A stretch of 64,000 nucleotides of DNA from Convolutriloba macropyga (lineage: Eukaryota): NCBI RefSeq assembly GCF_964194025.1, contig NC_134480.1, positions 13,826,001 to 13,890,000 on the forward strand. Reading direction: 5' to 3'. Below the pieces are notes generated by a model. The model was not told the DNA's origin. It saw only the letters and a program-made list of their open reading frames with translations, and did no database searches. Shown here piece after piece: positions 3,807 to 61,298 of the stretch; position 1 is the stretch's first letter, and each line of letters begins with the position of its first letter. Made by a program: the position numbers and the translations under genes.

Positions 3807-3841
3807 AATTATTAATAAAAATTTATAAATACGTTCAATTA

Positions 3842-4902
3842 CCCAGGTTTTGGTCCAGACCCTAATTGAGCTATGATCAGACCCAATCGAGCGCACACCC
3901 CTGTGTTCCCAGACCGAAATTACAGGGTCTGGAAAGCGGTTCGAGCGCACAATAGTCTGGACCATGGTCTGATTTCGGTCTGATCAGAGGTCAATTCGGT
4001 CTGGACGGTCTGATCATAGTCTTTATAGTCTGGACCATGGTCTGGGTTCGGTCTGATCAGAGGTCAATTCGGTCTGGAAGGTCTGATCACAGTCATTATA
4101 GTCTGGACCATGGTCTGGGTTCGGTCTGATCAGAGGTCAATTCGATCTGGAAGGTCTGATTTCGAGTGCATTTTTTTTCAAATTTTTTTGTTTTTTTTAG
4201 GGATGTTGGCTCTGCCAAGAGGCAACAATAAAGCAGCGTTCCGATCAGAGACTCATCTAAAGTCCGATGACTCTGGTCAGAAACAAGGAGTCCAGCTGAT
4301 AGCAAATGCCGGTCCCCTCAAGAGGAAATTTTGATTAACTGAAGACTACGAGGTTTCTTGTGGAAAACTGTCTAAGTTCATCCATTGAGTCAGAAATATG
4401 AACTAAGGGGTATGGTAAATAAAATTTTTTTCTCAACAGTTAAGTTTCGTTTTCATTAGCAATATTTTCAGAATTGGCTTTTCCTTAGATGATTTTAATA
4501 CACCAAACACCAGTTTTTTATGAAATGAATATATTATAGCAAAATTAAGAGATTTGTTCATAATTAAAACCTTTCTCTGATCAGACTATTATGAGCGCAC
4601 ATGAGTCTGATCATAGTCTGATTAAGGTCTGGGCAATGGTCTGAAAGTGAGTCTGGACCATGGTCTGAAGATGGTCTGATCATAGTCTGTTTATAGTCTA
4701 GACAATGGTCTGAGTTTGGGTCTGATCATAAGCGCACTATAGTCTGATCAGAGGACATTTTGGTCTGGAAAGTCTGATCAGAGATCATTTTGGTCTCGAT
4801 GATCTGATCAGAGGTAACTTCGGTCTGGAAAGTCTGATCAGAGGTCATTTCAGTCTGCATAGTCTGATCATAGCTCAATTTGGGTCTGGACCTAAACCTG
4901 GG
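3842..4902. mobile_element. Non-autonomous DNA transposon (MITE) with ~41-bp TIRs, TA TSD and internal TCTGATCAGA minisatellites
   Basis: Left TA|CCCAGGTTTTGGTCCAGACCCTAATTGAGCTATGATCAGAC; the right end reverse-complements to TA|CCCAGGTTTAGGTCCAGACCCAAATTGAGCTATGATCAGAC (2 mismatches). ~73-bp repeats at 3950-4160 and 30-bp repeats at 4741-4870. Remnants also at ~16590-16680, 24060-24290 and 24700-24850. Confidence 0.9.
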
Positions 4903-4904
4903 TA

Positions 4905-5565: not shown

Positions 5566-8500
5566 CTGTTAGCATTTTATATATTTACATAAACATTTAT
5601 GCTGCGGGTGCATTTACAAATTAATGATGGCAAACACAAAAAAGATCCACGAAAACGACTCTTAAATTTTTGGAAGTATTCTACCATTCTTGGTGCCCTT
5701 AAATTGAAGTTAAATCAGCCTGTTCATGATTCAATTTCACTAGAAGGATCCTTCTATTTCCACATACCAATATTCTAAAACTGACCAGTAGACGTAGTTT
5801 TGACCACAATTGAGACTGATCATTCTTCGACACCTTTTAATCGGGTTGAAATGCTAGGATTTTGAATGTAGTATTGAGAATTTAGCAAAACTTTGTCACT
5901 GATATCCATATCTTAGGCTAAAAATTCAGCGCTCAAATATTTTCTACCCCAGACTTGTATCAGATTCTTTTTTTACAGAACGGAGGCAAGGATTAAAAGG
6001 CATAACAAGAAATATAAATAAACAAGAAAAATATTTAAATAAAAACTATATTAAAGAGAACTAAGTCGACAATTTTACTAATGACTTTCAGAGACATTTT
6101 AAAAATCAAGAAAAATTGATTGAACAAGCTGAAAAAAATTTATTCAATAAAATACAAAAAGCATATTTTATGCAAATAGAAAAAACACAAGTTTTGTCGC
6201 AGTTATCAAAAATGATGTGTATAAATATTATATATTTTTATCTTTACATCGTTCTTTATCTTATTTCCTCAGGGACAAGACTGTTACACTATGGAAATTA
6301 CTTTTAAATTAGATTTAAACTTTCATTCAAACATGAAAATATTTGATTTTTTCATTGCTTGATTATTTTCAAGTAAGGGCCAGTAAAATTGAAACTAAAA
6401 AAAATTTTTTTCCAGTTGCTTATGTTCTCATTTTTTCCGTCGGTGCTGTCTGTCATTGCTACAAATTGATATTTTAGCAAAACTTTTTAGATTTATTGAT
6501 TCCAAATACTTCAAAGCCTATTGTGAATTTTTCGTATTATCGGAGTTTTTTTAATTGTCACTCTATTTTTGAAAATGACCCTTGAAGATGTTTTTCTGTT
6601 CTTTGTATCCTCGAACACGATTACCTCGAAAGAACAAGGCTCTTTTTAAGATTTTGGGTGACATACTTTGTAAAACGACCTTTCATTTGACAAATTTATT
6701 AAAAAGATATACCTTTACCTCTACTGCCGTTGTTGACGTTTAATAGTAAAGTATATCGTAAATTAAAATCTTCGTTGTAACGAAAAGAAAATTTGCAATG
6801 ATAGATATAAACTTTTTTGTTTATGTTATAATTTCTGTTACAGTTCTGTTGTTTTTGAAAAGCTTTTCAAATTTGATTGTTGTCCGTTATTTGCTAGTCA
6901 AGATTCAAAATCAAGTTTAAGCAGCTGATAAAGCTTCTGATGTTTTAATTAGCAACTTTTTCATAGTTCCCCATATAAAATTGCGCTATTTTTTGCAGAT
7001 ACGATTGAGCTATTACTAAAGACAAGCTTGCAATTCTTTTCCAACAAGAGTGCTGCAACTTAAATGAACAATTTGTTCGAGATATAGGAAAAGGGAACTT
7101 ATATTTTGAATAACATTGTATCTTCAGGACAACAACGAATTGCACAAATTTTTTTTTAACTAAAACTGGTCGAACTTGATAATATGGTTTTTATTAATTT
7201 AGTTAAGAATGATTTCAAGTAAACCTAATTGGTGAACGCGTCGGTCATACTTCAAAATCTGTGAAATTTAGGTTAAAAAGCATGAACTGTCTTGAATTTT
7301 TTGAAAGTGTCATATTCCTGCTTCTTTTTACTGAAGTATAAGCCTTGTATGTTGATGTGTTGATTCAAAAAACCATTTGCAAACGTGCATTAATGAGCCT
7401 AATTGTTAACAACACTAAAACTTACTTAATTTGAAAATAAATTTTTTCTAAATTTTTTTACATTAAGGTACCTAGACCATTACAGTTAAAATAGATAATT
7501 GATGAGCAATTAAGGTAGCAATAAAAATCAGCTGCGATAACTGCTTTATCTTAAGAATAAAATTTTTAATTGAATTTTTTTGGCAGTTTTCTAATAGTAA
7601 TTTAAATTGGATTGTTTTATCTCAGTGCTGTTTCTTATTGCTCCGGTGTTACTTCAATATTTACAGAAGCAAAAAATGCGAATTTGTTAAAAAGCAGCCC
7701 TTTGAAAGTTTTGCTCGGCACGTGAATAGACCGTGCTCGATCAATAAGTTTTCCTTGGCCCCACTATGCAATGAAATTTCTCGTCATGAAAAATTTTTCC
7801 TCGATCCATGAAAAGATATTTTCTCGACTTCAAGTACAAAGCTCTGCTGTGTAATTTTAGTAAATAAAGGCCCTTAAGTCCGAGGGAAAATCAGAGGCAT
7901 TTTTTTGGGTTAATTCCTAAAAAATTGTTTGCAGCAATGCGAACGTCAATATACAGAACATTACTAAACAATTTTAATGTCTGTTTTGTATTACACATTA
8001 CATGCCACAGTTCAAAAGTTTTTTAGTATATGTCACAATTTAGTTGCATCTCGAGAGGGTGACATATTGAATATGCTCTTTATAATGGTTGGGGGGGGGG
8101 GGGCAATGAAAATGAGACAAAGTCGAACTGTTTCTGTCACCGAGTTTGTTGCATTCTCTGGATTATTCTCCACAGTGGTTTGTTTTTGAACTCTTCAAAT
8201 TTCTGCTCTAGATCATCATGACTGCTTTTTCTATTATCTTGCAGCCATTTTCGTGCTTTTTCAGTTTCAGCCAAAACTTCTTCGTTCCCGTTCGCGTTGC
8301 ATTCAACCTAAACAATAAGCAAAAATTTATGAAGTAGCGCATTTTCTTCAATAAGTCTATTCGAGTCGGGAAAGTTCCCCAAAAAAATTTCTGTCTTTGC
8401 CAGTAACCCCCCCCCCCCCCCCGCTTATCTGTCAGATAACCTATAGCTTCCCTTCCCCAATCCTGGTAAGTATACCATAATGGGGGGTTATAACTCCATG

Positions 8501-11500
8501 GGGGGGGCTATAATGGGAAAAACCCAAAAGTTTGTTGAAAATTATCCTTGAAAATGTGCAACAAATGAAAGAGCTGAAAGCGCGAAACTTTACTTTTGTT
8601 AAGATCAGTCAAAGGTTCTTTAGAATTGTAGCATTTCAAGTAATTATAGCCTCCATTATTGTATCGTAAATGGGGGGGGGGGGGGTATACGTTGCGACAG
8701 CTAAGGCGGGGCTAGGATAATGAGAAAAACCCCAGTCAAGCTCCTATAGGCCTCTTTGATGATATAACGGTTGCTCATTTTTTAGCGGCTGGAGAGAAGC
8801 CTGTGCCACGGAATACGTTAAGACATTAACATTTGTTCTTGTTTCTGTCGGAGAAAAGTGATCGCAGTTTGTTTTAAAATCTGACATCTCTTTCTATACT
8901 TACTGATAACCAAAGTGTTGATAATAACTCAATTCAAAACTGTGAAATCTCCTACCTTTTCTGAATTTGGTTCCAACATTCAGTTTGTATGATCCCCCCT
9001 CCTAAATTATAAACCCCCCAATTACAGAGCACCTGTCATAACATAATAAATCATCATGTAAAAAAAAGCACGTGGGTGTGGGGTGCAATTAATATGCACC
9101 CACTAAGTGGAGGGCACAAATAGAAAACATCCAACTTTTCGATTGAATTGCTTGGAGCTTTCAGTTTTAATCAAATGCCAAGAGAATTTGGCCAGGTTAG
9201 ACGCTGAAATAAAAAAAAAGAGCTGGACCAGTCCTTAATTATAATTCAAAGAACTGAAGCAACAGAAGGCAACAAAAAGATCAGCTTCCGATAATAAACA
9301 AATGAAATGACAATACCTCCGCGAAAACAAACAAAATCCTCCAAAAACCGAAAAAAAGTTCATATTTCTCTTCGAAAAGGAGTATTATTGTAATATTTAC
9401 CCCAACAAAGTATACCTCAAAAAACTTTTACAAAGCAGAACCACAGCAAACGCCTACTCTGCTTACACAGCAAGCACCTATTGAGAAGAAAAGCACTGCA
9501 GACAAAATAGAAGGACTGCGCAAACAACATTTTGCCAAAACATGAATGTCATAACTGGTACCAAAGTTCGTGAAACACACTACTAAAACTTGAACTCTAC
9601 TGTCAATTGGAGGACCACGCAACAAAATAAGCAACAATTGCAGGTAACAATCAAAAGTTAGTCGAAAACAAATGGTGTCGAAGCTAATTAAATTCCTGGC
9701 TTTAAAGATAAACAATAAATACACCCTTTAATGCCTAATTGGAGAGCAATTGAGACACATCATCAATGAGACAAACTGACAAGACCACAAAAAACAATTA
9801 CAAAAATTTGCAGCCGGCGGGGTTGTCGGTAGCCTTCAGTAGGTTATCTCAATCAGTCTCTGTTACAGCAATTCGGGGGTCTGCAATCATGCTCCTTGCA
9901 AGGGATACAAGATTATAGACACATATGAAACGGGAGCAGATCTTTGAATCCTTGTTGCAGAAGTTAAGAGGCGAGTCGGCATTGAATAGTGTGTCATCCA
10001 TGAGCGGGGACAATCTATAGTGATAAGTTTTTGACTCACCCAATGAGTGGGGAGCCCAAATTTAATGAATTATCATACTAGTTGTACCTCAGTGGCGGGT
10101 GAAATGTGATTGTCCAGAACAGGAAGTTTTACCTCAAACAATTTTTCCAAAAAGGAAACTATTTTGATTGCATGATTGATTGCATGGGTTGAACTGATAA
10201 CAATGATCGTTGACCGTTTATGAACCAAGATTTTCTAATTTCGTGAATTAATCTGTAAAATATCTTTATATAAAAAAAATTACAAAAACTAAAATACTCC
10301 GACAAAAGTCTGAAATAATTTCTGAAAACAAGTCGTGCCAAAGTTAAAACTTGGAGCTTAAAATTGAAAAAACTAATTCAACAAAAATTTTCTGATATTG
10401 AAGCTAGTGAGGATCATGGTTAATGAGAGTAAGCGACAGAAAAACAAAAAACTACATGAAGGAGGAAAATCCAAAAATTTTTCGAAAACAGCTGTTGTCA
10501 AAGCAGTGAAGACACTGTTTCATATGAAAAACATTTAAACTGACAACAATTGGACTTATAAGATAGCCGCTTAGAGTTAACAATATTTAATCTAGGTGAC
10601 AAAACAAAAAAACTCCCAAAGATGGAAAATGATCAAAAAATTGCTATTTTTTTAAAAAAACAATTGTTGTCATAGTCGTTAAAGCCATTAGTTTTTAACT
10701 TAAATTAACCATTTAATACAAATTTGCCTCAAGAAATACATTTCATTTACACCAATCGTTGATGATATTAAATTACAACACCACAAAAAGAACAATAAAG
10801 AAAGGCAAAATACAAAAAAAATATTACTTTTATTTCATGAAAACAAATAATGTCACAGTCAATGAAAACCAATTGTTGACTGTTTGAGAGGTTTAAATAA
10901 GTTCAATTATGTATTATCGGAGCAAGGCCAATAGTTTTTAAAAGTATTTGTAGAGATATAAATTTGTTGAAAAGAAAAACAGCGAAAACAGAAGTCAAAT
11001 TGCCGCACCTGAAAAAATTTTTCTCTCAAAAACTGAAAATCTGTTTAAAAACCATTCTAATGTTCACTTTCAATAGCTCTTTCTAAGAGTCGCAACTTTT
11101 AGGTACTCAATTTTTGTTCCTCTTACAACTCTAGCATGACTAAAATCACTGCAACAAATTGACTTCTCAGTGACAAGAAAAGGTTTAAGAATTGTGTACA
11201 GATCATAAAAAAGACAGTACACCAATACAACTCAAATACTTTGAATAGGAAAAATTCAATCCGAACTCCGCAAACTCGTTAATCATTGTGCATAACAGAG
11301 CTCAAACTCGATTGGATTAAAAACTTTGGGAAGTTTTCGATGTTTAATAGCTATCAAGTCTACTCAATTTAAAAGAATCTGATCACTCTACCGCTTTGTG
11401 GATTTTTATGTAGCTCTATTTGATAAAAGTTATCAATGAAATTGACGATCGTTGAGCATAAAGATGAAAAATTAACTGTAAAAGTTTAACCTCCGTCTAT

Positions 11501-14500
11501 ATTGCTCGAAGGTTAACTGTTCTGAGATTATGTTCCGAAAAAATGCTTCTTAAGAGCTTCAATTTATTCTTCTTTTTTTTTCCACTCAAAAAACAGCAAC
11601 CAAATTGAAATTAAATCAGAATGTTATCAGTAAAGATATAAAAGTTTAAATTAGCATTAAGGTATCCAAATACAGGAAAAAAATTATGCGAGATTCAAAA
11701 GAACTTGCGTAAATTTTTGCAAACAAAATTGTTTAAATTTGGGATTGATTGTTTTTATTCCAGGCGAAATAAAAACCATCTACCTACCGTGAAGTTCCCG
11801 ACAAGAGACAACAATTTTTTTTAAACGAAAAGTTTTCATCGCCACTGAAAAATGGAATAAAGACATCGATTTTGTCTAAATGAAAGGTTGAAAAATTTGA
11901 GCAAATGTTTGTGATTACCTGAATTGAACGAAATCCTAAAATTTGGCTCAAGCAAATGACAAGTTAAGTGAAGAGTTTTGAGAGTTAAAATGATGTTCTC
12001 TCGTGTGGTATGTTTTTTCCAGCTTTTTGTTAGGATTCAGAAGCTACACTGGCGTGGGGTCATCTTACTCTCTATCATCAAATTGAACTCACGGAAACAT
12101 CGAAGGCCTAAACACTGACCCTTTTCTTAATAACACAACGTGTGGTTTATATATAAAACGTCCGATCAGCAAAATTCGTTCAATGGCACAGTTTTTTGCC
12201 TAAAAAAGCCAAATTTTGTTACGGATCTGTTTTTCATACATATTACTTTTTTAAAACTAGTTGCAATTTTTCTTGTATCTGTTCATCTTTTTTTGATCAA
12301 TAGTTTGCGCTTTACTGCGTTGACATATCATGCAGCGTCCCAAGTACCAGAATAAATTGTATTTTCGCGGTTAATTTGTTCAAACAACCAAGTAAAAATT
12401 TAGTTAGCAAATATCATAAATGATAAATTGTCATCTGAATAACCATAATTACAAAATTTGAAGATTAAGTTTTTTACACATCAGTTTAAAAAGTCAAAAT
12501 TATGAAACACTTTTAAATAGATTTCAATTTCCTTATTTGATTAAAATTTATCAAATTGTTTTTTGTATAGATTAGCAGACTTACTTTATAAACCAGGGAT
12601 CATGGAAACTCCTTTACTTAAGTAGTCACCATTAACTTTGGTGATCTAAATCTATTCTTTCCTTACAGCAGTGCCTAAAAATGCAAGGCACAGAAATTGC
12701 CTTCGGTGTCGTTGCAATTAATAGCCATTTCAAAAAATTTAAAAAATTCGAAGAACACAGTTTGGTTTTTGGTGAACACAATGTTCACTCAAGGAAAAAA
12801 CTATTTTTTAAAAATGATTACATGTGGCTTCGTTTTTTGAGAATTTAGTTTGATTTAAATCACTTGACATTTAACCAGGTTAGGTCAAATCACTTCAACA
12901 GGAGAAGATGAAAAGTATGTAGCGATGTAAGAGTAGACAGAAACATGAAGATGTAATGGTCACCGAGAATAGAGTCCACAATATCCATGCCAGCAAGTAC
13001 TGGTACTGCAAGTAGAGCTTAAATCAGCAGAAACAGGGTATACTGGTCTCATAGACAAATCAACCTCTCAATAAACCCACGAGATTCACAAGCGTAAAAA
13101 AACTGAATCAAGTTTTTCGTTTTTGTCATTTTGTTTCTCAGTGTATTACGAAATCGGCTTGTTACTCTCTTATTACTTCTCAAAAAATAGGAGAACTTAC
13201 ACTAGCCCTAATTTTTTTCGGTCCGAAAATTTTTCACCTCTGTGAGGACACCCCAAACCAACAAATGTGGAATGAGTTTGAAGATGTCTGCGTCTATTAT
13301 TTCACTACAAGATAAAATTTTGGGAATTTTGATTTTTTGAAAATGTTTTGGCGACTAATTTGACTCAAAAATTAATGCAGTTTAGCCTCATTTTTTAAAA
13401 TCAAATTTAGATAAAACTTTGTCAAAATTCAACCAATTCACACATCAGGTGGCTTATTGAGGGTATCATAGAAGAAGTACGTTTTTTTCAATGCTCCATC
13501 TTGAACTGAAACACATTATTTTTTTCATATGTTGTTTGAGACAGAGGTTTAGTCATTTCTAGCCATTTTTGAATTTTAGTCTGTTTCTTACCTTTTTGAA
13601 CATAATTTTCCGATGTTCCCTTAGTTTTGAAAAATTTTCATAGTCTTGAGAATTACGAAGAAAATTAATTGAGATCTGTCTAATGTTGGTTAGTTGAAAA
13701 AGAATTTCAGAAAAATAAAAAAAAAATTGTGAAATTACGTCTTAACTTTCCTGAAAATTTTGAAAAATAATGACTTTGAGAGATGTATTAATTAATCGTT
13801 CCGCATGTACTATTGACTCAAAAACGAACAGCAATATTTGTTTCTGCATTGTGTAGTTTATTTGGCTACTCTGAGAATTGAAAAAAAAACTTACTATTTT
13901 TTGATAGTTTTTCAAAAAATTCCCACATCTTTGTCCCCCTTTGAGGTTTCTTGTTTCATATAATTGTCAATCATTAAAACTGCAACCAATATCAATTGTA
14001 GGGAGGAGTTTCCTGTACTCAGTCGGCCGTTTTTGAGTTCCCATTTCGTATATTTTATTTTGTATTCGGTGCGGTCTTTTTCAAAGAGCACTTCGTACAC
14101 TCTTAGTGACTTCGAGGTCAACTTAAAGTAAAATTTGTGGCCTGATTTTGATTTCACCGGCCAGATCAAGTAGCAGAGACTGATCATCAAGAATGAAAAG
14201 TATCGGTACTCTGGAAACAAGTAAGGATGTGTTCAGTTGTTTAATTCCCTTTAACTTAGCTGCTTCGAAACATGTGTTTTTTTCAGAAACAGAAATTTAT
14301 TTTTTTTCAACTTTGTCCTGATCTTAAGTTATGTTTTGCTGTTAGTTCATCTTATTGTTGACAAATTCTTCGAGTGTTTGATGATAAAACGTTCAATAGT
14401 TTTGTATGCATTGGTCGGTCGCTTAATGATTTTTTAAGTAACTAAGTATATCTTTAAGTAAAAAGTATAAAAAATTTAACTCAAAGTATTTTTTTTTTAA

Positions 14501-15163
14501 AATGACCAGTCTGAATTGCTCTATATAATTAAACAATTTTGTTGTTTTGATACTCAAAATTTTTTTTAAGAAATGTTTTTGAGTTATTTAGTTTTGAATC
14601 CCAAACAATTATAAAAAAAAATTCAACACAGAGTTTTGTAAACAAATGTTTACGTATTCTAGTGCTTCAAGTTGCCTCAAAATGTCTTTTTTAATTTAAT
14701 TTCAGAGATATATAAGCTCCAAAATCCCTCTTACTAATTCAGTGCTATTGCATAGAAAAATATCTCAGCAAGTGAAGAAGCAGTTGAGCTCTTTTTTACT
14801 CTTTGAATCTCAAATATTCCAATCTTACACTCCTAAAGTTTATTATAATGAGCGGTTTTTCATAACTTATATTAAAAATTTTTTGAAAGCTTTCAAAATT
14901 TTACTTGTTTTCCAATAAATTGGATGCAAACTGATTTGAAACAGATTTATTCATTTTACCTACTTTTACCGCTTCTTTTATGTCACTGCCTAATTTCATA
15001 TAATCTCTAAATGCGTTCAATTGCCATTGTTTTATCAAGAACACATTTATAGAGACCTTGCTAGCAGACCTTATATAAGCCACATAATCGAGTCAATTAT
15101 GGCAGTTGAAATAAAAGGAACATTTGGTTTTCCAGCCTTGTGCGTTTCTGAAACAAAATCTGG

Positions 15164-15250
15164 CTACGAGTAATTTGAGGTGAAAACGGTTTCAGTGAAG
15201 CACGTGGTTTGAATCCGATGGCTGTTTGATGCTTTCGGTTTTTCTTTTAT
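15164..15250 (-). CDS. Probable HSP70 exon 5 (IKEKPKASNSHRIQTTCFTETVFTSNYS*); may be further spliced
   Basis: TTTTTTGCCTAG| acceptor in phase 0; weak lid-like similarity. A second acceptor (TTTTGTTTCAG near 15148) allows alternative endings. Confidence 0.45.
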   Translation of the reverse strand: MKEKPKASNSHRIQTTCFTETVFTSNYS

Positions 15251-18200
15251 CTAGGCAAAAAACTATTGTGACCGCCACAGCTACAATTGCCAACGTTTTT
15301 GACAGAGAGTTTTAAAAACCATTAACTTTTAATTGGAAGCCGGCAATATGACTTTGCGAATATTGATAGCCTTCAAACTTCGAATGAGCTATAGACAAAT
15401 ACAGATAAAGCATAATGAAAACCAACAAAAATGCAAATCGATTTGAAACTTAAATAGTTCATGATTTTTAAAAGAAGCACAATTGAGGAAAACCCTTGTG
15501 ATAATGTTTATCCATAAGTTATGTGCAACTAAGTATTCTTTCGTTTTTGAAAATTAGGTAGATGTTTTGTTTCCATTGACAACTCAAATACTTTTATCCG
15601 CTGTTTTTTTTCAAAGTCCAGCTAAACCATATTGACTTTTATCGAAGCAGCTTGATGAAAACCTTGTTCGGTGCTAAAACAAACGTTTGTGCAATATCAT
15701 TTCCGAGATAATAATTTGTCATGTTATGCTTTCAAATGCTATTGTGGGAACATATGCGAACATATGCTTTTAAATGCTGATGTTGCAAAACATTAAAAAG
15801 GTTTAAAAATATCAATTACAGAGGTTCTTAATCTTCCTTAATAAATTATTGTGGGTTAAATCCAGTTCGTGTTGCTACGGTAAGAACGCGCCTATAAAAA
15901 AACAATTCTCCTTTAATTTTGCCGTTTTTAATACTAGCCCAATTCTGTGAAATCCTTAGAGGTCCCATGTTTTAAAATAGAAAAATGGAATCCAGAAACA
16001 CGTACTTTGTCCCTGATGGTTTGGCCTCGGAGGTGTCATAAAACCTTTTGCCACTATTCCTATTTTAAAATAATTCCCTTTGTTTACCTCTTCAATATAT
16101 TCGAGGAACTCGTCCTTCAACTCTAAGCGTTCCAACTCTTTCCGATCAGTCTCTCGGAACCTTTCTTCGTCATTCAACATGGCCTGGATATCCCTGCACG
16201 AGATCCGGTCTTTCGCCTTGTCAATTCTCATCTCACACTAAAAAACTATTAATGCTGATAATAATCTATAATGATGTAAGAAGATTGAGAGAGAACAACC
16301 TAATGTGAATTGTGCATAAGATAAACTTGACATAGCTTGACAAGAAGCTCTACTTGTTCAACGTATACTTGGCTAGAGAAATAAAGCCTCGAGGAACAAG
16401 AAAGAACGTGAGAACGGGTTATAAGAGATGCCTAAGTTCGAGAGCTTAAGACGAGTTGGTGTAATTGGTAGCACACTAGGCTTGCAAGTAAGAGATACTG
16501 GTTTGAATCCAGTGCTGGTCCATGTTCATAGTAGCTGCACCTGCATAGAACCCCTAGCAAATGACGTACTAGTAGATCATGATTAATTATCAGAGGATAA
16601 ATCCGTCTGGGATGGTCTTATCAGAGACCGCACATAAATTATCGAGACCACATCAGTCTGACCAGAGGTCACTTTCGTCTGGCACGGGGGAGGAGAAGGA
16701 GGGGGGACGGAGGAGTGGAGGAGGGGCGTGTATTTATGACGAATTGAACATGCATATTGATAGGAATTTGGGCGAAATTTGTTATCTGCTCTGTTTTCAC
16801 TTCCAAACTGAAAATCCCCCCCCCCATTTAATTTATACCTTTAAACTGAACTGTTTTTAAATGCTTTTAAGTCAATTGTAATTGATTAAAATGCAGATAT
16901 TATTACCTTTTTGCCTGTGTGTCTCTCAATTTCTCTAACAGTCAAGACACCATCAGCATCCAAGGCCAAATATACATCATATGCGTTTTTTCCAACAGGC
17001 GCAGGTTCGATTCCCTCTAGGACAAACTCCCCCAAATAGTTGCTATACTTTTGAAACTTTCGCTCCCCTTCAAAAACTTTGCACGTGATCGCTTTCTGAT
17101 TGGCTACCGTAGTTCTGAACTCTTTCATGTTTTCACACGGGATTGGTTCGTTTCTGGGTATAATCACGGATACCAGTCCCGCCTTCACGGCCACTCCAAG
17201 CGATAATGGACAGACATCTGATCAGAGCTCTTTTTCAAAGAAATCCAATTAGAAGATAACTATTGAATTATTAGTTATCTCTACCGAAATTCAGAGAGTT
17301 GAGAATAATTTAAGTGACCGATATGAATGCTAATGTTTTTGGTCATTCATAATCTGGATAAAACATCACAGGTTATAACAAAAATTGATTTTCTTTATTA
17401 ATTCTGCAATTTGAATTATTTATAAATCACGCAAGATTCTTGCAAGATTAACATCCTGAATCAACTGGGGCAATGAAGCAATGTTCATAAAAAGCAAGAG
17501 AGCAATATCGAAAAGATTCTCTGAACGAAAAATTTCATGTTTCTGAAAATTTTGAAAAGTCTACAGACTACAGATCTCAATCTGAAAAGTTTCATTACTT
17601 TTTAGTTTAAAAAAACTGATTGAACAAATTTGCATGAAATTTAAGAACCGTTTTGAAAAATTGCGGATATACTAGTCGAAAAATAAGTCTTGTAAGACCT
17701 TCTAAGAGCAATGTATGGTTTCGCACAATCATTGCAAGGTTAATTTTTATTCAAAGGTTAACTTTTGTTATCGCAAGGTTAACTTTTGTTTTCGACGTAG
17801 GAAATATCTCTGAGGAAATTTGTGTCAGCTTCAAAAAAGAGCCCTTTTAAAACCACAGATTTGAGCTCGGCACTCTTTTTGATCAGGGCAGCTTGGATCG
17901 CAGCACCTCTGGCTACAATCTGTTCCGGATCTCCGTTATAAATCACCTTCTGTTGACCAAATTTTTCCTTCAAACTTTCCCTGATTTTGGGAATCTTAGA
18001 CGAACCTCCAACGAGCAGAACAAAATCGATGTTATCCGGTTGCAATTTCGCCTCTTCTAAAATTTCTTCAACATATTTCTCAATTCGTTTGAACAAATCG
18101 TCCGAAATCGCCTCGAAGCGGGCTCTCGAAATTGTTTCATTGAAATCATTCCCATTTATCAGTTCAGGAATATCAATTTTCCCATTTGTTTCGCTTGACA

Positions 18201-21200
18201 ATTGATGTTTGGCTTGTTTACAGTTTTCCATTAGTTTCATCATCGCTATTTTTGATTCTGGCAATCCCTTCCCGCATTGCTTAGCAACTTCTGGTTCCAA
18301 AAACGACATCAAACGGGAATCGAAATCTCGACCACCCAGAGCTGAGTCACCGGTCGTTTTAACAACGGTGAAAACTTCGTTTTTGCATTTAACAATTGTG
18401 ATGTCGAAAGTTCCGCCTCCTAAGTCGAACACTAAAATCAACTTTTCCTCAAATTCGAAGTTTTTGTCCAAGCCGTGAGCCAAAATTGCTGCAGTCGGCT
18501 CGTGTATTAGCCGGATTACATCTAGCTTGGCAATTTTAGCGGCTGCTAGGGTTGCCTCCCGTTGCTCACTATTAAAATAAGCCGGTACTGTTATTACAGC
18601 CTCTGAAATTTTCAAATCTAAAGATTTTTCTGCTTGTTCTTTCAATTTGGTCAGCAGCATAGCTGAAATCTGTTCAGGTGTCAGTATTTTTTCCTCCCCG
18701 AAGCAAACCAATTTGAACTTGGGTTTGTTGTCTTCGTTGACGACTTCAAAAGTGCAAGACTTGATCAGATCCGCGATATCTGGGTCGTCGAACTTCCGCC
18801 CGATGAATCGTTTTGCGTCGTAGATTGTGTTTCCGACATTCTCGTTTGCCTAAATTTTGGAATGAAATGGCATATTGACTGTCACTTGATTGGTAGTGAC
18901 ATTTTAAGCGTTTTAGAAACAATTTATAATGTGCTTTTGTAGGTACAGTTTTTCTCCGAGACTACACTACAAACAACTTGCTAAAACTCAGATAAAGAGT
19001 AAAAATATATTTGCTCGTTTGTCAACAATTCAAACAAATTCTGGTTATGGCGTGTTCCAGCTCGGAAAACTCTCAGTTTTTTCCTTGTGTTTGTTTGTTT
19101 CAGTGATATAGGTTCACAAATGAGAAAGGTGCACAAAAAAGGTTAAAAAAGGCACATGGTGCGGGAACCCTGCTTGATTTTTTTCACCAGTAATATTTCA
19201 AATCTTACAATTTGAAGAAAACTTAATTGCTGCTCGCCTATTTTTCCACTCACAATTGACACACGTAAAAACATTGATTGAAGTATCGTTGCACTCTTAC
19301 TGACCAATTTACTATGGCATATCAAAAGTGAGTTTCGAAATCCAATGCTCTCTACCCGGAAAACTGTATGAGTTTTTATACGGATAAGACGTGTTCTGTA
19401 GCTGGTTTTTTTGTAGTAAATTCAGAATGTCTCATGGGAGTCTCAAGAGTAATTAATATTAAACTTAAGACTTACCTAACCAGTAAAAGATGCACTTCTC
19501 TTAGTCTAGAAATTTTCTGTTCTATGAGAATATTTAGGCAAAGCATGGGCCCTAATGCTAAAATCTTGTCGTTCATATCTGNNNNNNNNNNNNNNNNNNN
19601 NNNNNNNNNNNNNNNNNNNNNNNNNNNNNNNNNNNNNNNNNNNNNNNNNNNNNNNNNNNNNNNNNNNNNNNNNNNNNNNNNNNNNNNNNNNNNNNNNNNN
19701 NNNNNNNNNNNNNNNNNNNNNNNNNNNNNNNNNNNNNNNNNNTTTTACAAACTCAGACCAATTTTTTTAATCTCAGCCAAAACTGGCCCCGCGGTAAAAA
19801 AAAAAGCGAAACTGATCGCACAATTACGTGTCAAGTAATTAAAAATTGAATTTCATAAATAAACAAAGAACAAATTATAAGCTTCGGGCATTCAATTAGG
19901 AATCCTTGATCGTAACGATATTTTTTAACCGTGATGGTGAGTTTTGGTTTTCGCCATTAGATTCTCAGATTAATAGTTCACGGTACATTTTTCCCTGGGC
20001 ATTTCATTTTCTCCCTTTTTTGTTAATGAACTCTTTTGCTGCCTTTTGTAGACTTGGTAGGGAATAACGTGAAGAGGGCTTAAATGCTGAACGTTAGCTT
20101 GTGGCTTGGCCTTCATCAACTTTTCTGATTCATTTTCAGCGAACAATTCATCGCATAATGATCAAGTTTTCAGCTCTCCTTTGTATATACATTCTCTTAC
20201 TCATCATCATCAGTTTTAATAAACATTCCTGCCAGCAATGTTGTCGCTCTGCAGGATATTCGTTCGCCCTAAATGTTTGGGTAAACTATTTCGTTGGCCA
20301 CTTCCGTTTGCTTCTGGAGCTCCTTAATTTGACGAAGAGTGGCTTCATGTTCGTTTGAATTGCGGCGCCAAATGCTTCTTGTATTCGGCTCATTGACATT
20401 TTTGAGATCTCGGGAACATCAAAACAGCTGTTACGGATGATGCAGAGATCATTGTTTTCCGATGTCAACGTTTTTTTTGCATTGTTTGCCCTAGAGAATT
20501 TTTTGTCACTTCGTTCCTATCCTTACGCGGGATTTTGCTACTAATATCTCTGCATATCCCCGATCTTTTCCGCGTTCAGTTGTTTGTTCCTTCTCCGGCA
20601 GTCTTTGCCGTCTGTTTTTGTTAATACTAGAGGAAGTTTGTGGATATCGTCAAGAGGTCCCCACAGCTGTTTGTTTTTTGTGGGCTCAAAGAAGATACGT
20701 AAGGCATTCCATTTGTGGTCTTAATCGAGTGGAGACATTAATTTTCCGATTTTCTCTCAACATCTTAAAACTGTTTACCTCGTGTATTTTAAAACTGCTA
20801 GTTCAGCTCTGACTTAAAAGTTTTCTCTGTTGAAAACCTTCCGAAAAGAAAACAAAGTAACTATATTTTTCTTTTTCGCCGTGCAATTTTTTTTATTCGT
20901 ACCAAAACAGCGAAAAAGTATAGAAACCCTTGTAACCTGTTCCGTTAACTCTATAATGGGCGCTACAGCTGTTTTGTTGCTTACTATTTCAACATTTGAT
21001 TGCTAGCAGTGCTTGCCTGTATAAAGTTTCGTCCCTGCTGTAAAAAGTTTTTAAACTAGAGAATTAAAAAGTTAGAAAATGATTAAAACTGCAGTTAGTT
21101 AAGATGTATAAAAAGACAAGCCTAAAATATTGAGCCTTTTCTGTTTGTCGGTCACCACAAGCGGCAATAGTTATTTTTACCAAAAAAAATTTTTGTTCGA

Positions 21201-21497
21201 AGATTTTGCAAGAAAAACTCAATCGCTTAAAATGTTGTATAGGTTGCTTTTATGATTTTTAAAAAACCATTATTCGACCCAGATCCAAAAAACGAGGCTA
21301 ATTTGGACTAATGACTACAGTGATCATACCTGTTCTAGGGCTGCTGATCCGATGAGTCGTTGATTGCCCGAGAATGCGACATAAGAAGGAGTAGTTGGAC
21401 TCTCATCTTCGTTCAAAATGACCTGTGCCTCCCCGTCACAGTAACTAGCCACGCAGCACGCACTAGTACCCAAATCTATGCCTATATAGGCAACCAT
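15164..21497 (-). CDS. Divergent HSP70-family chaperone, 5 exons: 21330-21497, 17844-18849, 16907-17217, 16088-16237, 15164-15250 (~573 aa; last exon uncertain)
   Basis: Spliced translation contains GIDLGT, TTPSYVAF, NTIYDAKRFIGRKFDD, AVITVPAYFN, RLIHEPTAA, VFDLGGGTFD, LGGRDFD, LLVGGSSKIPKI, ARGAAIQAA, DVCPLSLGV, FEGER, LGEFVLEGIEPAP. All exon phases are consistent. Confidence 0.92.
16088..16237 (-). CDS. HSP70 exon 4 (lid helix A/B: CEMRIDKAKDRISCRDIQAMLNDEERFRETD...YIEE)
   Basis: TTTTTTAG| acceptor and GAG|GTAAAC donor; aligns with canonical [29 protein letters not shown]. Confidence 0.85.
16275..16592 (+). mobile_element. Dispersed repeat carrying an internal tRNA-like segment (SINE- or solo-LTR-like), in HSP70 intron 3
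   Basis: 16340-16550 aligns with the reverse complement of ~57440-57660. Begins TGTAAG, contains AATAAA; boundaries approximate. Confidence 0.6.
16450..16521 (+). pseudogene. tRNA-like sequence (TGC/Ala-type anticodon loop), degenerate
   Basis: Acceptor GACGAGT/GCTGGTC, D arm GTGT/GCAC, perfect T arm ACTGG-TTTGAAT-CCAGT. The anticodon stem is broken and the T-loop has C->T. Confidence 0.65.
16907..17217 (-). CDS. HSP70 exon 3 (substrate-binding beta domain)
   Basis: Acceptor TGATCAG|ATGTC (an in-frame TGA just upstream forces this site); reads (D)VCPLSLGVAVKAG...RHTGKK; donor AAG|GTAATA. Confidence 0.9.
17218..17843 (-). other. Putative non-canonical GG-AG intron (626 nt) with base-paired termini
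   Basis: Starts GGCTCTTTTTTGAAG and ends CTTTGAAAAAGAGCT-CTGATCAG. The junction restores KSVVLK|DVCPLSLG, matching the HSP70 linker DLLLLDVTPLSLG. Confidence 0.7.
17844..18849 (-). CDS. HSP70 exon 2 (nucleotide-binding domain)
   Basis: Acceptor TTTAG|GCAAAC at 18850, in frame with ORF 17779..18711. HSP70 similarity stops at ...KSVVLK, implying a GG donor at 17843. Confidence 0.9.
19582..19742. other. Assembly gap (N run) within HSP70 intron 1
   Basis: 161 N. Confidence 1.
21330..21497 (-). CDS. HSP70 exon 1 (not in ORF track): MVAYIGIDLGTSACCVASYCDGEAQVILNEDESPTTPSYVAFSGNQRLIGSAALEQ
   Basis: 168 nt, HSP70 signature 1, ends CAG|GTATGA (phase 0). Confidence 0.93.
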
Positions 21498-27912: not shown

Positions 27913-30900
27913 ATGTCTTCGGATAACTTTACGACGTATCGCACCAAAGCGAGTAATCTAGAATCGAAGCTGAACAGTAAAATGGCTCCAGCCATCCAGG
28001 AGCAGCAATTGGACGATGCGTATGGATTCTACCGCAAAGCAGCAGAAAGTGCCAGAAATGGCGATGACCTTCAAAGTACGCTGAAAGATGTTCAGAGAGT
28101 ACTAATAGAGAAGATGAAATTCTACAGGAATTGCTTAAGATTTTCTTTAAGTTTTCGCTTAACATTTTTTCATTTCTTGAATCAAACAGCGGCAAAATTG
28201 CTCAATATTTATTAGGTCTTTTTATTAGGTTTTTATTAAGTTTTGTCTAGAAAAGTTTAACAAAATGTCGTTGCTGCTTGTGTTAAAACTGTTAAATACT
28301 TTGATTTTTTTTGAATAGCGCTAAAAATTAATATTTGCTAGTTTTTAAGTCATATAAGTTCCCGGTCGAGGTGTCACCGCTAAAAATCGCTAAAAGATGT
28401 AAGATTTGCAGTGAATTTGAGGAAACAGTGTAAGCTTTGCGCTCAATGCGTTGAATTCGGTGAAAAAACTTTTAATTGGTGAATAAATTTTTTCAACGCT
28501 TAAGCGGTGAAAAAAAATTCACCGCTACCAGCAGAATGCGGTGAAAAAAAATTTCACCGTTACCAGCAGAATGCAGTGAAAAAAATATTTTCATCGCTAC
28601 CAGCAGAATGCGCTGAAAAAAAATTGCAAATCTTTTTAATATTTGCCGCTATTTTCAACGCTTGTCTTAAATTCACAGGAAATATCATTAATGTATGTGA
28701 GAGATTGCGTAGTGGAATAAAAAGTTGTAGACATGCAGGAGGTGCGAGGTTCGAAACCGTGTACGGTAGTTTTTTTTGTAAGGAATGCGGTGAAAAAATT
28801 ATTTCACCGCAAATCTTACAAAAATTCACCGCATTCAACGCTAAAATATGCGGGCACTTTGCGGTGAAAAAAGTTTTTTTTCACCGCTATTCACCGCTAA
28901 TCTTACATTATTTTTTGACCAAACCTCGACCCGGGTTGGTTATAACCTGAAAACCAAAGTAAAATGACTTCTCGGGTCAACAAATTATTGCACATATTTG
29001 CACGAAAATGCCTGAAGTCGCTGAATTTTCACAATGTATCTCATTCAGCGATTATTATAGAAAATTAAATATTATTTCTTTAGCTCATATTTATTTTTAA
29101 CTCAGCGCTGAGAATAAACCTGTACTCGCATTATCATCAAGGCGATAGCTGATTATAAAGATTCATTCGATTAAATAATTTTGTTCGGTTGAAGTTGATA
29201 TTTTATAAATATGCACACTGAAAAAGGGATAATCGCCAAATTGGCCGGCAGTGTTTTAGCCGAAAACTTAAAAAATGGTATCCGAGCCGACAACCCACCG
29301 GCACACCATTTTTAATGCTCGGACGAAATAGGGATGTTTCGAGCGGTACACGCAAAGGAAGCCGAAGTAAAAGTAAGCCGACAGAAAAGCAAGCTGAAAG
29401 TTATGCAATAGTTACGTAATCTATCAGAAATAATACATTGTTAGCCGTTGAAATTAAAACTGCGCGTAGTATTACAGTGCATAATGTATTCCAATGCACC
29501 AAAGAAACAAAAATACGTCAATTTTTAGACATCTAGTGGGTGGTGTTAGGACAATAGATCGAAAAACAACAGATCGAAATCAAAAACTGGGACAATAGTA
29601 GATCGAAAATTAAATTGTTTAAGATGCGTTTTGGCCAATCATATTTGAGTGCTCATTTATTATACAGCATATAACAAGTTCTGTTGCGATATTTTGTTCG
29701 GTTGTGATGGATTAATATCAAGTCCCATGGTCCGCTAAGGCATGGCTATGGCTCGCGAGGCATGGTCAGAATGTGGTAATTATTGCAGCTGGCAGATAAT
29801 GCTCAGTTTCAACCAATAAGAATAGAGATTGATTTTCGATCTATTGTCCCAAGTTTTTGTTTTCGATCGGTTGTCCTTTCCATCTATTGTCCGGTCACCC
29901 TAGTGGGTAAGGGCCTCGGCAGACCGCTGTCCATGGCCATGCCTCTCATCCGCTGTTGGATGTAATCCCGAAACCACGGGCCGCGGCAAAGCCGCGACGC
30001 GCGCAAAGCGCGCTCACCCGCCCGCCAGGAGCAACTTAAAATACGGGTATCCCAAAATACGGATTACTTGACCTCATTTTCAAAATAGGCTTGCTTGCCT
30101 ATCAGCTTACTTGACCACCACCGTTTCGACCGGTCTGATTTTTCGACTAATCAGAGTTAACCTTGCGGGTAAATTTCTCATTTCTTCATGTCGGCTGAAA
30201 CCCACGTCGGCCAATAGTGCCACCAAAGAAAAATTGATTAAAAATTTCAAAAAAACAGTTCCTCTTAATAGAAAAAATCCCCAATACTGTACCAACTACT
30301 GGCAAGCCGTTAGTAAACTAATTGAAGATATATCGTATCTTCACAGTCGATTACGTTTCAAAACTGGCAGCAATCAAAAAGCCGATTTTGGAAAAATTCC
30401 AGAAGAAATTGACCGGATTCTGGACGACGTCGAAAAGCATATGTGGAGTAACATAGACCCGTACGAAGCTTCATGTTTAATGTTTGGCTCATTTGCCCAA
30501 GGAGCCGACAAAAACGCCATGGGTTTCAAACTATTCGCCAATTACAAATATGCGGACTATCTTTTCAAAGAGGGTGTGAAAAGTTTGGAAAATGATGAAA
30601 TGTTATTAAACGCTAGGAAGGTGTTCAAAGAGGCGTACACGCCTCTAGAAGCTGGTCAGTATATAATCGACAGGAGTAAAAGAGTCGAAGGGATATTTGA
30701 GAACGAGAAGAAATGGCTGGGAAAATGGGAGAAAGAGTTCGAGATTAAAAGGAATGAGGTTCTTATGGAGTCTAAAAGAACGGATGCAAAAATTTTGCTT
30801 CAAGAAAGGATTTTTCTGATGCGAAAATTTATGAATGACTCTTTAAGCTAACTAAATCAGGAATTCCTGAAACAAATGGAAAACCGAACTTTTTGACGAG

Positions 30901-61061: not shown

Positions 61062-61298
61062 TTGTAAGTAATTTGTAAGTCGAATGGTTAATTTGTAAGA
61101 GCCTTGTAAGTCGAATGGTTAACTTGTAAGAACTTGTAAGTCGAATGGTTAACTTGTAAGAACTTGCAAGTCGAAGGGTTAACTTGTAAGAACTTGCAAG
61201 TTTTTGGAAGAAAAACTTGCAAGGCGATGCATCGCCTTGTAAGTTTCTGCCAGAAACTTGCAAGTTCTTACAAGATAACCATTCGGCCTCGACCCGGG
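61062..61298. mobile_element. MITE right arm: 30-bp CTTGTAAGTCGAATGGTTAACTTGTAAGAA repeats ending CCTCGACCCGGG
   Basis: Same terminal 12 bp as the 28361-28935 MITE; the left part probably lies in the gap. Confidence 0.75.

What the first reader, a model, noticed from the sequence alone, without database searches (positions are those of the whole stretch)
17218..17843. Independent second case: GG-AG intron in HSP70 with a ~15-bp terminal RNA stem held by G.U wobbles
Seen: the acceptor is forced (in-frame TGA just upstream) and needs a phase-1 donor. HSP70 linker homology (KSVVLK-DVCPLSLG = QDLLLL-DVTPLSLG) places the donor at AAA G|GGCTC. On the transcribed strand, 5' GGCUCUUUUUUGAAG pairs without interruption with CUUUGAAAAAGAGCU, which ends 8 nt before the intron end. 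All three deviations from a DNA inverted repeat are G.U pairs valid only in the sense RNA. The arms are unrelated in sequence to those of the 30804 intron, so a single shared transposon TIR does not explain both. Inference: selection acts on RNA pairing, with the same geometry (stem from +1, 7-8 nt tail to AG) in two unrelated genes. Canonical alternatives (A|GTGCCG ~17873, A|GTTAAC ~17783) would delete or insert residues in the conserved interdomain linker.
Basis: partly seen in the sequence, partly recalled or inferred. Interest (0 to 1): 0.85.

Follow-up and report, generated by a model that had tools for sequence, protein, structure and literature searches.

The report
Hairpin-closed GG-AG intron, acoel HSP70
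An HSP70-family gene of an acoel worm (most likely Convolutriloba macropyga) holds a 626-base intron that starts with GG instead of GT, has ends that pair as a 15-bp RNA helix, and is cut out exactly in RNA data. It is one verified member of a class of such introns in this genome, and the RefSeq gene model misses it.

Summary
The intron 17843-17218 (minus strand) is missing from contigs of an independent transcriptome, at exactly the predicted junction. A repeated AG leaves 2 nt of ambiguity, and no register gives GT. DNA contigs of two samples and two assembled copies of the gene all read GG, so this is not an assembly error.

Splicing at the GG donor gives a 601-aa HSP70 that aligns without a gap at the junction to the 600-aa Symsagittifera roscoffensis orthologue. 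The RefSeq model (412 aa) reads into the intron and stops there.

The first 15 nt pair without a break (3 G.U) with nt -23 to -9. One of 20,000 shuffles does as well. A second, diverged copy of the gene (L007) keeps the helix, with one C/U difference opposite a G, although most of the intron interior is unrelated. The intron is absent from the orthologue and from a paralogue. Seven canonical GT-AG introns used as controls lack such helices.

The most likely reading is a lineage-specific, insertion-derived intron removed by a spliceosome that tolerates G-N donors, with the helix helping to pair the two splice sites. Neither that role of the helix nor a transposon origin is shown here.

This scan has already noted the same class elsewhere in this genome. 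I found no publication describing it in acoels.

The parts
21330..21497 (-). HSP70-family gene, exon 1 (ATG 21497-21495; ends CAG)
   Evidence: Pfam HSP70 positions 2-53. It matches the start of the RefSeq protein P0121.
18850..21329 (-). Intron 1, canonical GT..AG, no terminal helix
   Evidence: Sequence. The best terminal helix is 4 bp.
17844..18849 (-). Exon 2 (ATPase domain, 335 codons plus the first base of the split D codon)
   Evidence: Pfam HSP70 positions 56-387, E 3.8e-105. The transcriptome contig X6 record 28 fits 18470-17844 and then leaves the genome.
17218..17843 (-). Intron 2: 626 nt, GG..AG, phase 1, removed from mRNA
   Evidence: X6 has zero depth inside the intron. Contigs join ...GGTTTTAAAAG to ATGTCTG.... 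Splicing here restores a gap-free alignment to the orthologue. The intron is absent from the orthologue and the paralogue.
17829..17843 (-). 5' arm of the terminal helix (intron +1 to +15, GGCTCTTTTTTGAAG; U-rich)
   Evidence: Identical in the second copy L007 through +17.
17226..17240 (-). 3' arm of the terminal helix (intron -23 to -9, CTTTGAAAAAGAGCT; purine-rich)
   Evidence: Duplex energy is -16.4 kcal/mol. In L007 the first C is T, so that pair changes from G-C to G.U.
17218..17225 (-). 8-nt single-stranded tail CTGATCAG ending in the acceptor AG; holds the in-frame TGA
   Evidence: L007 reads GTGATCAG.
17352..17472 (.). Dispersed repeat fragment inside the intron (about 85 times the single-copy k-mer depth)
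   Evidence: Depth is about 3,800 against about 45 in the DNA runs. The rest of the intron is at single-copy depth.
17731..17790 (.). Three tandem ~21-nt units (TTGCAAGGTTAAC type) in the 5' part of the intron
   Evidence: the repeat finder family D1.
16907..17217 (-). Exon 3 (start of the substrate-binding domain, DVCPLSLG...)
   Evidence: Pfam HSP70 positions 389-488. Of the 17 differences from the second copy, 16 are at third codon positions.
16238..16906 (-). Intron 3, canonical GT..AG, spliced in RNA; carries a tRNA-derived SINE
   Evidence: X6 joint 16237^16907, CT..AC on the + strand. The best terminal helix is 4 bp. Rfam tRNA hit at 16450-16521.
16088..16237 (-). Exon 4
   Evidence: X6 contig record 25; gene model.
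8308..16087 (-). Intron 4, canonical GT..AG (7.8 kb)
   Evidence: The X6 loose end at 16086 matches 8305-8276. The best terminal helix is 7 bp.
8137..8307 (-). Exon 5, coding part up to the TGA stop
   Evidence: The complete spliced protein is 601 aa.

Best explanation
What it is: a genuine, efficiently removed intron in a functional HSP70-family gene of an acoel, most likely Convolutriloba macropyga. It lies in the interdomain linker, in phase 1, and reads GG...AG.

Origin: it is specific to this gene lineage. The Symsagittifera orthologue and a paralogue in the same genome lack it. It carries inverted-repeat ends, so it most likely arose from an inserted piece of DNA (transposon-like; inferred).

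What the intron lacks: its 5' end cannot pair usefully with a standard U1 snRNA, matching only at -2, -1, +1 and +6. It has no pyrimidine tract before the AG.

Proposed mechanism (inferred): in the pre-mRNA, nt +1 to +15 pair with nt -23 to -9. This closes the 626-nt intron into a stem and brings the donor within 8 nt of the acceptor. A spliceosome that requires only G at +1 and AG at the end then removes the intron by the usual two-step chemistry. The helix stands in for the missing cross-intron signals.

Shown: precise removal in both copies of the gene, GG in the DNA, the helix in both copies, and absence of the intron from relatives.
Inferred: the insertion origin, spliceosomal chemistry, and a helping role for the helix.
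For: RNA: run X6 behaves as a transcriptome. It covers exons only, and it joins 16237^16907 across the canonical GT..AG intron 3. Its 646-nt contig fits 18470-17844 and then continues for 19 letters that do not fit the intron. Two contigs coming from exon 3 carry the loose end TTTAAAACC, the reverse complement of the end of exon 2. Depth inside the intron is 0.

DNA: contigs of two samples match the window across both intron ends with no differences and show no intron-less joint. The independent contigs L006 and L007 also read GG.

Frame: the Pfam profile runs 387|388|389 across the junction. The 601-aa product aligns to orthologue P0124 with no gap at the junction. Of the 17 exon 3 differences between the two copies, 16 are at third codon positions, so the downstream exons are translated in this frame.

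Helix: 15 bp in both copies. 1 of 20,000 shuffles reaches 15 bp. Pair probability is 0.87-1.0 with flanks of up to 60 nt in the window copy. Duplex energies are -16.4 and -14.8 kcal/mol.

Two-copy comparison: the first 17 nt are identical and the last 23 nt differ at 2 positions, one of which keeps its pair (G-C to G.U). Nt 18-461 have no detectable similarity, and the last 165 nt are 68% identical.

Lineage-specific: S. roscoffensis reads ...SVTLADVCPLSLG without a break. Paralogue P0004 is also continuous there.

Controls: seven canonical GT-AG introns have terminal helices of 2-9 bp and have pyrimidine tracts. The only other non-GT intron in the window has a 17-bp helix.
Against: - No experiment or covariation series shows that the helix is needed. 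One pairing-preserving change in two sequences is weak evidence.
- Arm conservation (1 difference in 30 nt) is not significantly below the ~10% substitution divergence of intron 3.
- In the L007 copy the helix competes with other predicted folds when flanks are added (probability 0.05-0.28).
- A 15-bp helix that covers the donor would normally hinder U1 and U6 access.
- There is no convincing target-site duplication: only AG is repeated, and the 8-nt tail matches the preceding exon at 4 of 8 positions.
- The intron is single-copy by k-mer depth apart from a nested repeat, so a transposon origin is not demonstrated for this case.
- No lariat or branch point was observed.
Confidence: 0.6

Rival explanations
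1. The helix is a passive relic. The inverted ends are leftover terminal repeats of a decayed transposon. The acoel spliceosome simply tolerates G-N donors, as in Eurytemora and Oikopleura, and finds this intron through exonic AG|G, U-rich sequence just after the donor (a TIA-1-type enhancer) and the YAG acceptor. On this reading the pairing contributes nothing.
For: - GA and GG donors without any reported stem make up about 12% of introns in Eurytemora (PMC5714493). As there, our exon ends in AG.
- The 5' arm is a U-run directly after a weak donor.
- The arms are not significantly more conserved than neutral expectation at the substitution level.
- Inverted repeats are abundant in this genome: 209 pairs of 15 nt or more, and about 1,800 helices of 13 bp or more within 3 kb in the window.
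Against: - Every deviation from a perfect DNA inverted repeat is a G.U on the sense strand, in both copies.
- The interior was replaced right up to +18 while the arms stayed.
- Both non-GT introns in the window have helices of 15 bp or more from +1 with 7-8-nt tails, while seven GT introns have none.
- The intron lacks a pyrimidine tract, so some other 3' definition is needed.
Confidence: 0.27
2. Non-spliceosomal removal. The stem is the substrate of a structure-specific endonuclease and ligase pathway, comparable to the nonconventional introns of euglenids, which pair at their ends and are released as circles.
For: - The donor is buried in a stable helix.
- There is no U1 complementarity and no pyrimidine tract.
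- Euglenid nonconventional introns are defined by end pairing rather than by boundary dinucleotides (PMC11282704).
Against: - G at +1 and AG at the 3' end are kept here, in the second copy and in the 30804 intron. These are the residues the spliceosome's second step needs, and a structure-only enzyme would not require them.
- The same gene has ordinary GT-AG introns.
- The geometry differs from the euglenid +4-6/-8-6 pairing.
- No such pathway is known in animals.
Confidence: 0.07
3. Artefact or dead gene. The apparent junction is a reverse-transcriptase template switch across the hairpin (a short AG repeat at both sides), or the transcripts come from an intron-less copy, and the genomic gene is a truncated pseudogene as in the RefSeq model.
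For: - Template switching favours hairpins flanked by short direct repeats, and AG is repeated at both boundaries.
- RefSeq models a 412-aa protein that ends inside the intron.
Against: - The junction restores the frame and the conserved linker exactly.
- Intron depth in the transcriptome is 0, not a minor skipped fraction.
- Exons 3-5 downstream are under purifying selection, with 16 of 17 exon 3 differences between the copies at third positions, and they are spliced onward through canonical introns in the same contigs.
- The DNA runs show no intron-less joint.
- Both copies give the same junction.
Confidence: 0.03
4. Nested (stwintron-like) splicing. An inner intron starting at +2 (GC...) is removed first, up to an internal AG followed by T. 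This rebuilds a canonical G|GT donor that is then used with the final AG.
For: The window copy has AG|TTAACC sites about 60-100 nt into the intron that would rebuild G|GTTAAC. Mature mRNA cannot tell this route from direct splicing.
Against: - The 5' interior is not conserved in L007. There the first AG|T lies 18 nt in, too short for an inner intron.
- AGT occurs by chance about 9 times in 600 nt.
- The model does not explain the helix or the GA-AG neighbour.
Confidence: 0.03

Closest known systems
GA/GG-donor introns of the copepod Eurytemora affinis (Robertson 2017, PMC5714493) and the G-N..AG introns of Oikopleura dioica (noted in PMC7072748)
   Same: An animal genome in which G at +1 is kept but +2 is free. 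The exon ends in AG before the donor. The introns are recent or idiosyncratic. Automated gene models break at them.
   Different: Those reports describe no end-to-end helix. Eurytemora donors almost always have A at +3, whereas this one has C. The lineage here is an acoel.
Introner elements of Amoebophrya (PMC7789003)
   Same: Non-canonical introns with 8-20-nt inverted repeats joining the two intron ends into a hairpin, plus short direct repeats across the boundaries. Here the inverted repeat is 15 nt and the direct repeat is AG.
   Different: Amoebophrya introners are multi-copy families with highly varied boundary dinucleotides, in a dinoflagellate that seems to lack U1. This intron is single-copy, keeps G..AG, and sits in an animal gene.
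MITE-derived non-canonical introns of Fritillaria borealis (Henriet et al. 2019, as summarised in PMC11282704)
   Same: An animal in which canonical GT-AG introns occupy conserved positions and non-canonical introns occupy species-specific positions. The non-canonical introns have inverted-repeat ends and are thought to be removed by an adapted U2-type spliceosome.
   Different: Fritillaria introns are mostly AG-AC or AG-AT with clear target-site duplications. Here the boundaries are G-N..AG and no target-site duplication is evident.
Nonconventional introns of euglenids (PMC11282704)
   Same: The intron ends are brought together by base pairing, the boundaries are non-canonical, and there is no pyrimidine tract.
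   Different: Euglenid pairing is short (+4-6 with -8 to -6). Their boundaries are not G..AG, their products are circles, and they are protists. None of this was tested or met here.

Membership tests
HSP70 protein family (host gene) | Match to Pfam PF00012 across the ATPase and substrate-binding domains | tested here: met
   Exons 1-3 match profile positions 2-53, 56-387 and 389-488, with E down to 3.8e-105. The 601-aa product is 63% identical to the S. roscoffensis HSP70-like protein P0124.
Spliceosomal intron with G-N..AG boundaries (Eurytemora/Oikopleura type) | Precise removal from mature mRNA | tested here: met
   Transcriptome contigs join 17844 to 17217, and intron depth is 0.
Spliceosomal intron with G-N..AG boundaries (Eurytemora/Oikopleura type) | G at +1 and AG at the 3' end | tested here: met
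   GG..AG in one of the three registers the mRNA allows. The other two are GG..CA and AG..TC. The second copy reads the same.
Spliceosomal intron with G-N..AG boundaries (Eurytemora/Oikopleura type) | Exonic AG before the donor and A at +3 (Eurytemora logo) | tested here: inconclusive
   The exon ends AAAAG, so that part is met. Position +3 is C, so that part is not met (PMC5714493).
Spliceosomal intron with G-N..AG boundaries (Eurytemora/Oikopleura type) | Lariat with a branch-point adenosine; pyrimidine tract | not testable with these tools
   No lariat reads were available. Sequences that fit a branch-point consensus (CTAAT with A at -32; TTGAT with A at -29 in L007) exist just upstream of the 3' arm. 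No pyrimidine tract lies between them and the AG.
Transposon-derived intron / introner | Terminal inverted repeats at the intron ends | tested here: met
   The 15-nt arms are 12/15 Watson-Crick at the DNA level.
Transposon-derived intron / introner | Target-site duplication at or across the boundaries | tested here: inconclusive
   Only AG is repeated. The 8-nt tail matches the 8 exonic nt before the element at 4 of 8 positions, which is chance level.
Transposon-derived intron / introner | Many similar copies in the genome | tested here: not met
   No other copy is in the 64-kb window. K-mer depth at both arms is single-copy, and only 17352-17472 is repeated. A search of the whole genome for diverged copies was not possible.
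Transposon-derived intron / introner | Lineage-specific position (absent from orthologues) | tested here: met
   Absent in the S. roscoffensis orthologue and in paralogue P0004.
U12-type (minor spliceosome) intron | 5' splice site RTATCCTT and branch site TCCTTAAC 10-20 nt before the 3' end | tested here: not met
   The donor is GGCTCTTT. No TCCTTAAC-like box is conserved between the two copies near the 3' end.
Euglenid-type nonconventional intron | Short end pairing at +4-6/-8-6, boundaries without G..AG, circular product | tested here: not met
   Pairing here is +1-15 with -23 to -9, and the boundaries are G..AG. The form of the excised product could not be tested.

The most novel reading that the evidence does not exclude
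Acoels have a second, structure-defined way of choosing splice sites. For a genome-wide class of young introns, an end-to-end RNA helix starting at +1, rather than U1 pairing with GU and a pyrimidine tract, tells the splicing machinery where to cut. This lets inserted DNA become an intron at once. Such a structure-guided intron class has not been described in a bilaterian animal.
Probability: 0.3. Interest if true: 0.85.

Novelty: new variant of a known kind. Interest (0 to 1): 0.6.

Why it matters
(1) Annotation. The RefSeq protein for this gene is cut to 412 aa and lacks its substrate-binding domain because the pipeline cannot splice GG-AG. The real product is 601 aa. If the class is common, many gene models in acoel genomes are wrong in the same way.

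(2) Intron evolution. This is a clean, RNA-verified case of an intron present in one acoel gene lineage and absent from its orthologue and paralogue. It has inverted-repeat ends, and its interior has since been replaced while the ends were kept.

(3) Splicing mechanism. An animal that removes introns lacking GU, U1 complementarity and a pyrimidine tract, but closed by a helix, offers a testable system for structure-assisted or U1-independent splice-site pairing. It would sit alongside Fritillaria, Eurytemora, Amoebophrya and Euglena.

Tried and rejected
- Assembly error at 17843-17842: rejected. DNA contigs of two samples and two assembled copies read GG.
- Canonical alternative donors A|GTGCCG and A|GTTAAC: rejected by the RNA junction and by the 10-aa deletion or 20-aa insertion they cause.
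- U12-type intron: rejected, because the donor and branch boxes are missing and not conserved.
- Reverse-transcriptase artefact, retrocopy or pseudogene: rejected (see the rivals).
- Multi-copy introner family: no other copy in the window, and single-copy k-mer depth.
- Target-site duplication: none convincing.
- A 39-nt hairpin-only allele: I first read the DNA joint 17239->17827 this way. Fetching L007 showed it is the second copy, with a different 564-nt interior.
- Statistical test of arm conservation against neutral divergence: not significant (1 observed against about 3 expected).
- Literature: no paper in the held library links acoels with introners or non-canonical introns.
- snRNA genes: none in the window, so U1 and U6 could not be inspected.
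- Window-wide scan for further stem-closed G..AG segments: it gave many chance helices, because G.U-tolerant pairing is common in this AT-rich DNA, and only unverified candidates.
Full report
**Gene and organism**

The region is part of a five-exon HSP70-family gene on the minus strand.
- Exon 1: 21497-21330
- Exon 2: 18849-17844
- Exon 3: 17217-16907
- Exon 4: 16237-16088
- Exon 5: 8307-8137

Pfam PF00012 matches exons 1-3 at profile positions 2-53, 56-387 and 389-488.

The 90%-identity cluster that holds the window's own exon 2 product also holds RefSeq XP_075259883.1 of the acoel Convolutriloba macropyga. So the window most likely comes from that species. That RefSeq protein (412 aa, P0121) consists of exon 1, exon 2 and a read-through of 21 codons into the intron studied here.

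**The observation**

- Exon 2 ends AAAAG at 17844, and the intron begins GGCTCT at 17843.
- The only usable acceptor is the AG at 17219-17218, because an in-frame TGA lies at 17224-17222.
- Intron nt +1 to +15 (17843-17829) pair without interruption with 17226-17240. Twelve pairs are Watson-Crick and three are G.U (17843.17226, 17833.17236, 17832.17237).
- An 8-nt tail, CTGATCAG, follows the helix.
- In this copy two further pairs with the last two exon bases are possible, giving 17 bp. They are not kept in the second copy.

A 15-bp terminal helix arose in 1 of 20,000 dinucleotide-preserving shuffles of the intron, even with 3 start offsets and 16 tail offsets allowed. It is in the MFE and centroid folds. 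Pair probabilities are 0.87-1.0 with flanks of up to 60 nt, and the duplex energy is -16.4 kcal/mol.

**Is it spliced?**

Run X6 is a 2016 run of the same organism from another sample, labelled 'DNA?'. It behaves as a transcriptome: it covers exons only, and it joins 16237 to 16907 across the canonical GT..AG intron 3.
- Its 646-nt contig fits 18470-17844 and then carries 19 letters that do not fit the intron. That is exactly the distance from the start of exon 3 to the first polymorphic site at 17198, where a k=31 unitig must end.
- Two contigs coming from exon 3 carry the loose end TTTAAAACC, the reverse complement of GGTTTTAAA at the end of exon 2.
- The mRNA therefore reads ...GGTTTTAAAAG|ATGTCTG....
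- AG is repeated at both boundaries, so three registers fit: GG..AG, GG..CA and AG..TC. None gives GT.
- Intron depth in X6 is 0, against 50-130 in the exons.

The DNA runs X1, X3 and X5 (two samples) match the window across both intron ends without a difference and show no intron-less joint. The GG donor is therefore real, and the removal happens at the RNA level.

**Frame and function**

Splicing at the GG donor gives a 601-aa protein. It aligns to the 600-aa orthologue of Symsagittifera roscoffensis (P0124) at 63% identity, with no gap at ...SVVLK-D-VCPLSLG...

Between the two copies of the gene, 16 of the 17 differences in exon 3 and 21 of the 26 in exon 2 are at third codon positions. So the exons downstream of the intron are translated in this frame. 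This, together with the zero intron depth, rules out a reverse-transcriptase skipping artefact or a dead gene.

**A second copy of the same intron**

L007 is a contig of the same ENA assembly that holds the window's own sequence (L006). It carries a diverged copy of the gene, either a haplotype or a recent paralogue; this was not resolved.
- Its eight synonymous differences in exon 3 are exactly those of the minor variant seen in the DNA runs and in X6. In X6 the variant is spliced at the same junction.
- Its intron is 564 nt, GG..AG.
- The first 17 nt are identical to the window copy.
- The last 23 nt differ at two positions. One is C to T at the inner end of the 3' arm, which turns a G-C pair into G.U. 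The other is C to G at the first tail position, which removes the possible extra exonic pair.
- Nt 18-461 of the window intron have no detectable similarity to L007, and the last 165 nt are 68% identical.
- Both copies therefore keep an unbroken 15-bp helix from +1 with an 8-nt tail.

Caveats:
- Exons differ by 3.1%.
- The neighbouring canonical intron 3 shows about 10% substitutions plus many indels. One difference in 30 arm positions, against about 3 expected, is therefore not significant on its own.
- In L007 the predicted helix (-14.8 kcal/mol) is in the MFE of the intron alone but competes with other folds once flanks are added.

**Age and origin**

The S. roscoffensis orthologue reads through this site without an intron. 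It has a canonical GTGAGT intron 24 nt further on, also in phase 1. Paralogue P0004 in the same genome is continuous through both sites. The intron is thus specific to this gene lineage, and a gain is the simplest reading.

It has inverted-repeat ends, but only a 2-nt direct repeat (AG) and no convincing target-site duplication. Apart from a nested dispersed repeat (17352-17472) it is single-copy by k-mer depth and has no other copy in the window. A transposon origin is therefore plausible but is not shown for this intron.

**Comparison with ordinary introns**

Seven canonical GT-AG introns were used as controls: three in this gene, three in the paralogue, and intron 3 of L007.
- Six have best terminal helices of 2-7 bp. 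L007 intron 3 reaches 9 bp in an A/T run.
- They have pyrimidine tracts before the AG.

The GG-AG intron differs in three ways.
- It has a purine-rich 3' arm in place of a pyrimidine tract.
- Its donor matches the U1 consensus only at -2, -1, +1 and +6.
- It has the 15-bp helix.

The only other non-GT intron in the window (30804-31257, GA..AG) has a perfect 17-bp helix from +1 and a 7-nt tail. Its arms are unrelated in sequence to these.

**Mechanism**

I consider it most likely (about 0.6) that the helix forms in the pre-mRNA, brings the donor to within 8 nt of the acceptor, and so substitutes for the missing U1 and pyrimidine-tract signals. Removal itself would be by a spliceosome that needs only G at +1 and AG at the end. 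The retention of exactly these residues in both copies and in the neighbouring intron argues for spliceosomal chemistry.

The main rival (about 0.27) is that the helix is a passive relic of terminal repeats. On that reading the donor is found through the exonic AG and the U-run just after it.

Non-spliceosomal excision, artefact and nested splicing are minor rivals.

**Known relatives**

- GA and GG donors are common in Eurytemora affinis (PMC5714493) and Oikopleura (PMC7072748).
- Hairpin-forming inverted repeats with short direct repeats mark the introners of Amoebophrya (PMC7789003).
- MITE-derived non-canonical introns at species-specific positions are known in Fritillaria, and end-paired nonconventional introns in euglenids (PMC11282704).

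The present case combines G-N..AG boundaries with a long helix starting at +1, in an acoel. I found no paper in the held library that describes this in acoels.

Earlier notes of this scan report the same class at other places in this genome, some with RNA support. I used them only as context and did not re-test them, apart from the stem of the 30804 intron.

**Verdict**

This is one more verified member of a class that is a new variant of known kinds. The particular value of this case lies in the two-copy comparison and the demonstrable mis-annotation in RefSeq.

Noticed in passing
window 17779-21497 (minus): RefSeq XP_075259883.1 (Convolutriloba macropyga LOC142351631, 412 aa) equals exon 1, exon 2 and a 21-codon read-through into the GG-AG intron. 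The model lacks the whole substrate-binding domain. The spliced product is 601 aa.
   Followed up: yes
window 16263-16746 (inside intron 3): A very high-copy tRNA-derived SINE. K-mer depth is about 2e5 against about 45, and Rfam finds a tRNA at 16450-16521 on the + strand. It has a tail of TCTGATCAGAG-like units. Much of it is absent from the second copy L007 (433-nt intron 3), which keeps the tail part, so the insertion differs between the copies.
   Followed up: partly
L002:7000-7030 (Symsagittifera roscoffensis orthologue): The orthologue has a canonical GTGAGT intron after ...CPLSLG. It lies 24 nt downstream of the C. macropyga GG-AG site and is in the same phase (1). C. macropyga has no intron at that position. 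This could be a loss plus a nearby gain, or a coincidence.
   Followed up: partly
L007:1605-2168 vs window 17843-17218: Between the two copies of the gene, intron nt 18-461 are completely unrelated, while the exons differ by 3% and the neighbouring intron by about 10% substitutions. The interior of the stem-closed intron has been replaced right up to the inner edge of the 5' arm. In DNA samples S1 and S2 the L007-type intron and exon 3 appear at lower depth without the L007-type differences in exon 2, which may indicate a recombinant haplotype.
   Followed up: partly
window 29549-29849 (+): A perfect 17-bp inverted repeat (GGACAATAGATCGAAAA and its complement) spans 301 nt. It starts with GG and is followed by CAAG, just upstream of the ORF at 30111-30851. 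It could be another stem-closed GG-AG intron in a 5' exon or simply a small MITE. No RNA data were checked.
   Followed up: no
window 3840-4904: A MITE-like element with 43-nt terminal inverted repeats (95% complementary, 979 nt apart). It is rich in GGTCTGATCAGAGG units, the same motif family as the SINE tail. The tail of the GG-AG intron (CTGATCAG) shares the core of that motif.
   Followed up: no
window 33037-33119 and 61112-61285: Arrays of palindromic CTTGCAAG-containing units (GATAACC/GGTTAAC ... CTTGCAAG). Similar TTGCAAGGTTAAC units form the three tandem 21-nt repeats in the 5' part of the GG-AG intron (17731-17790).
   Followed up: no
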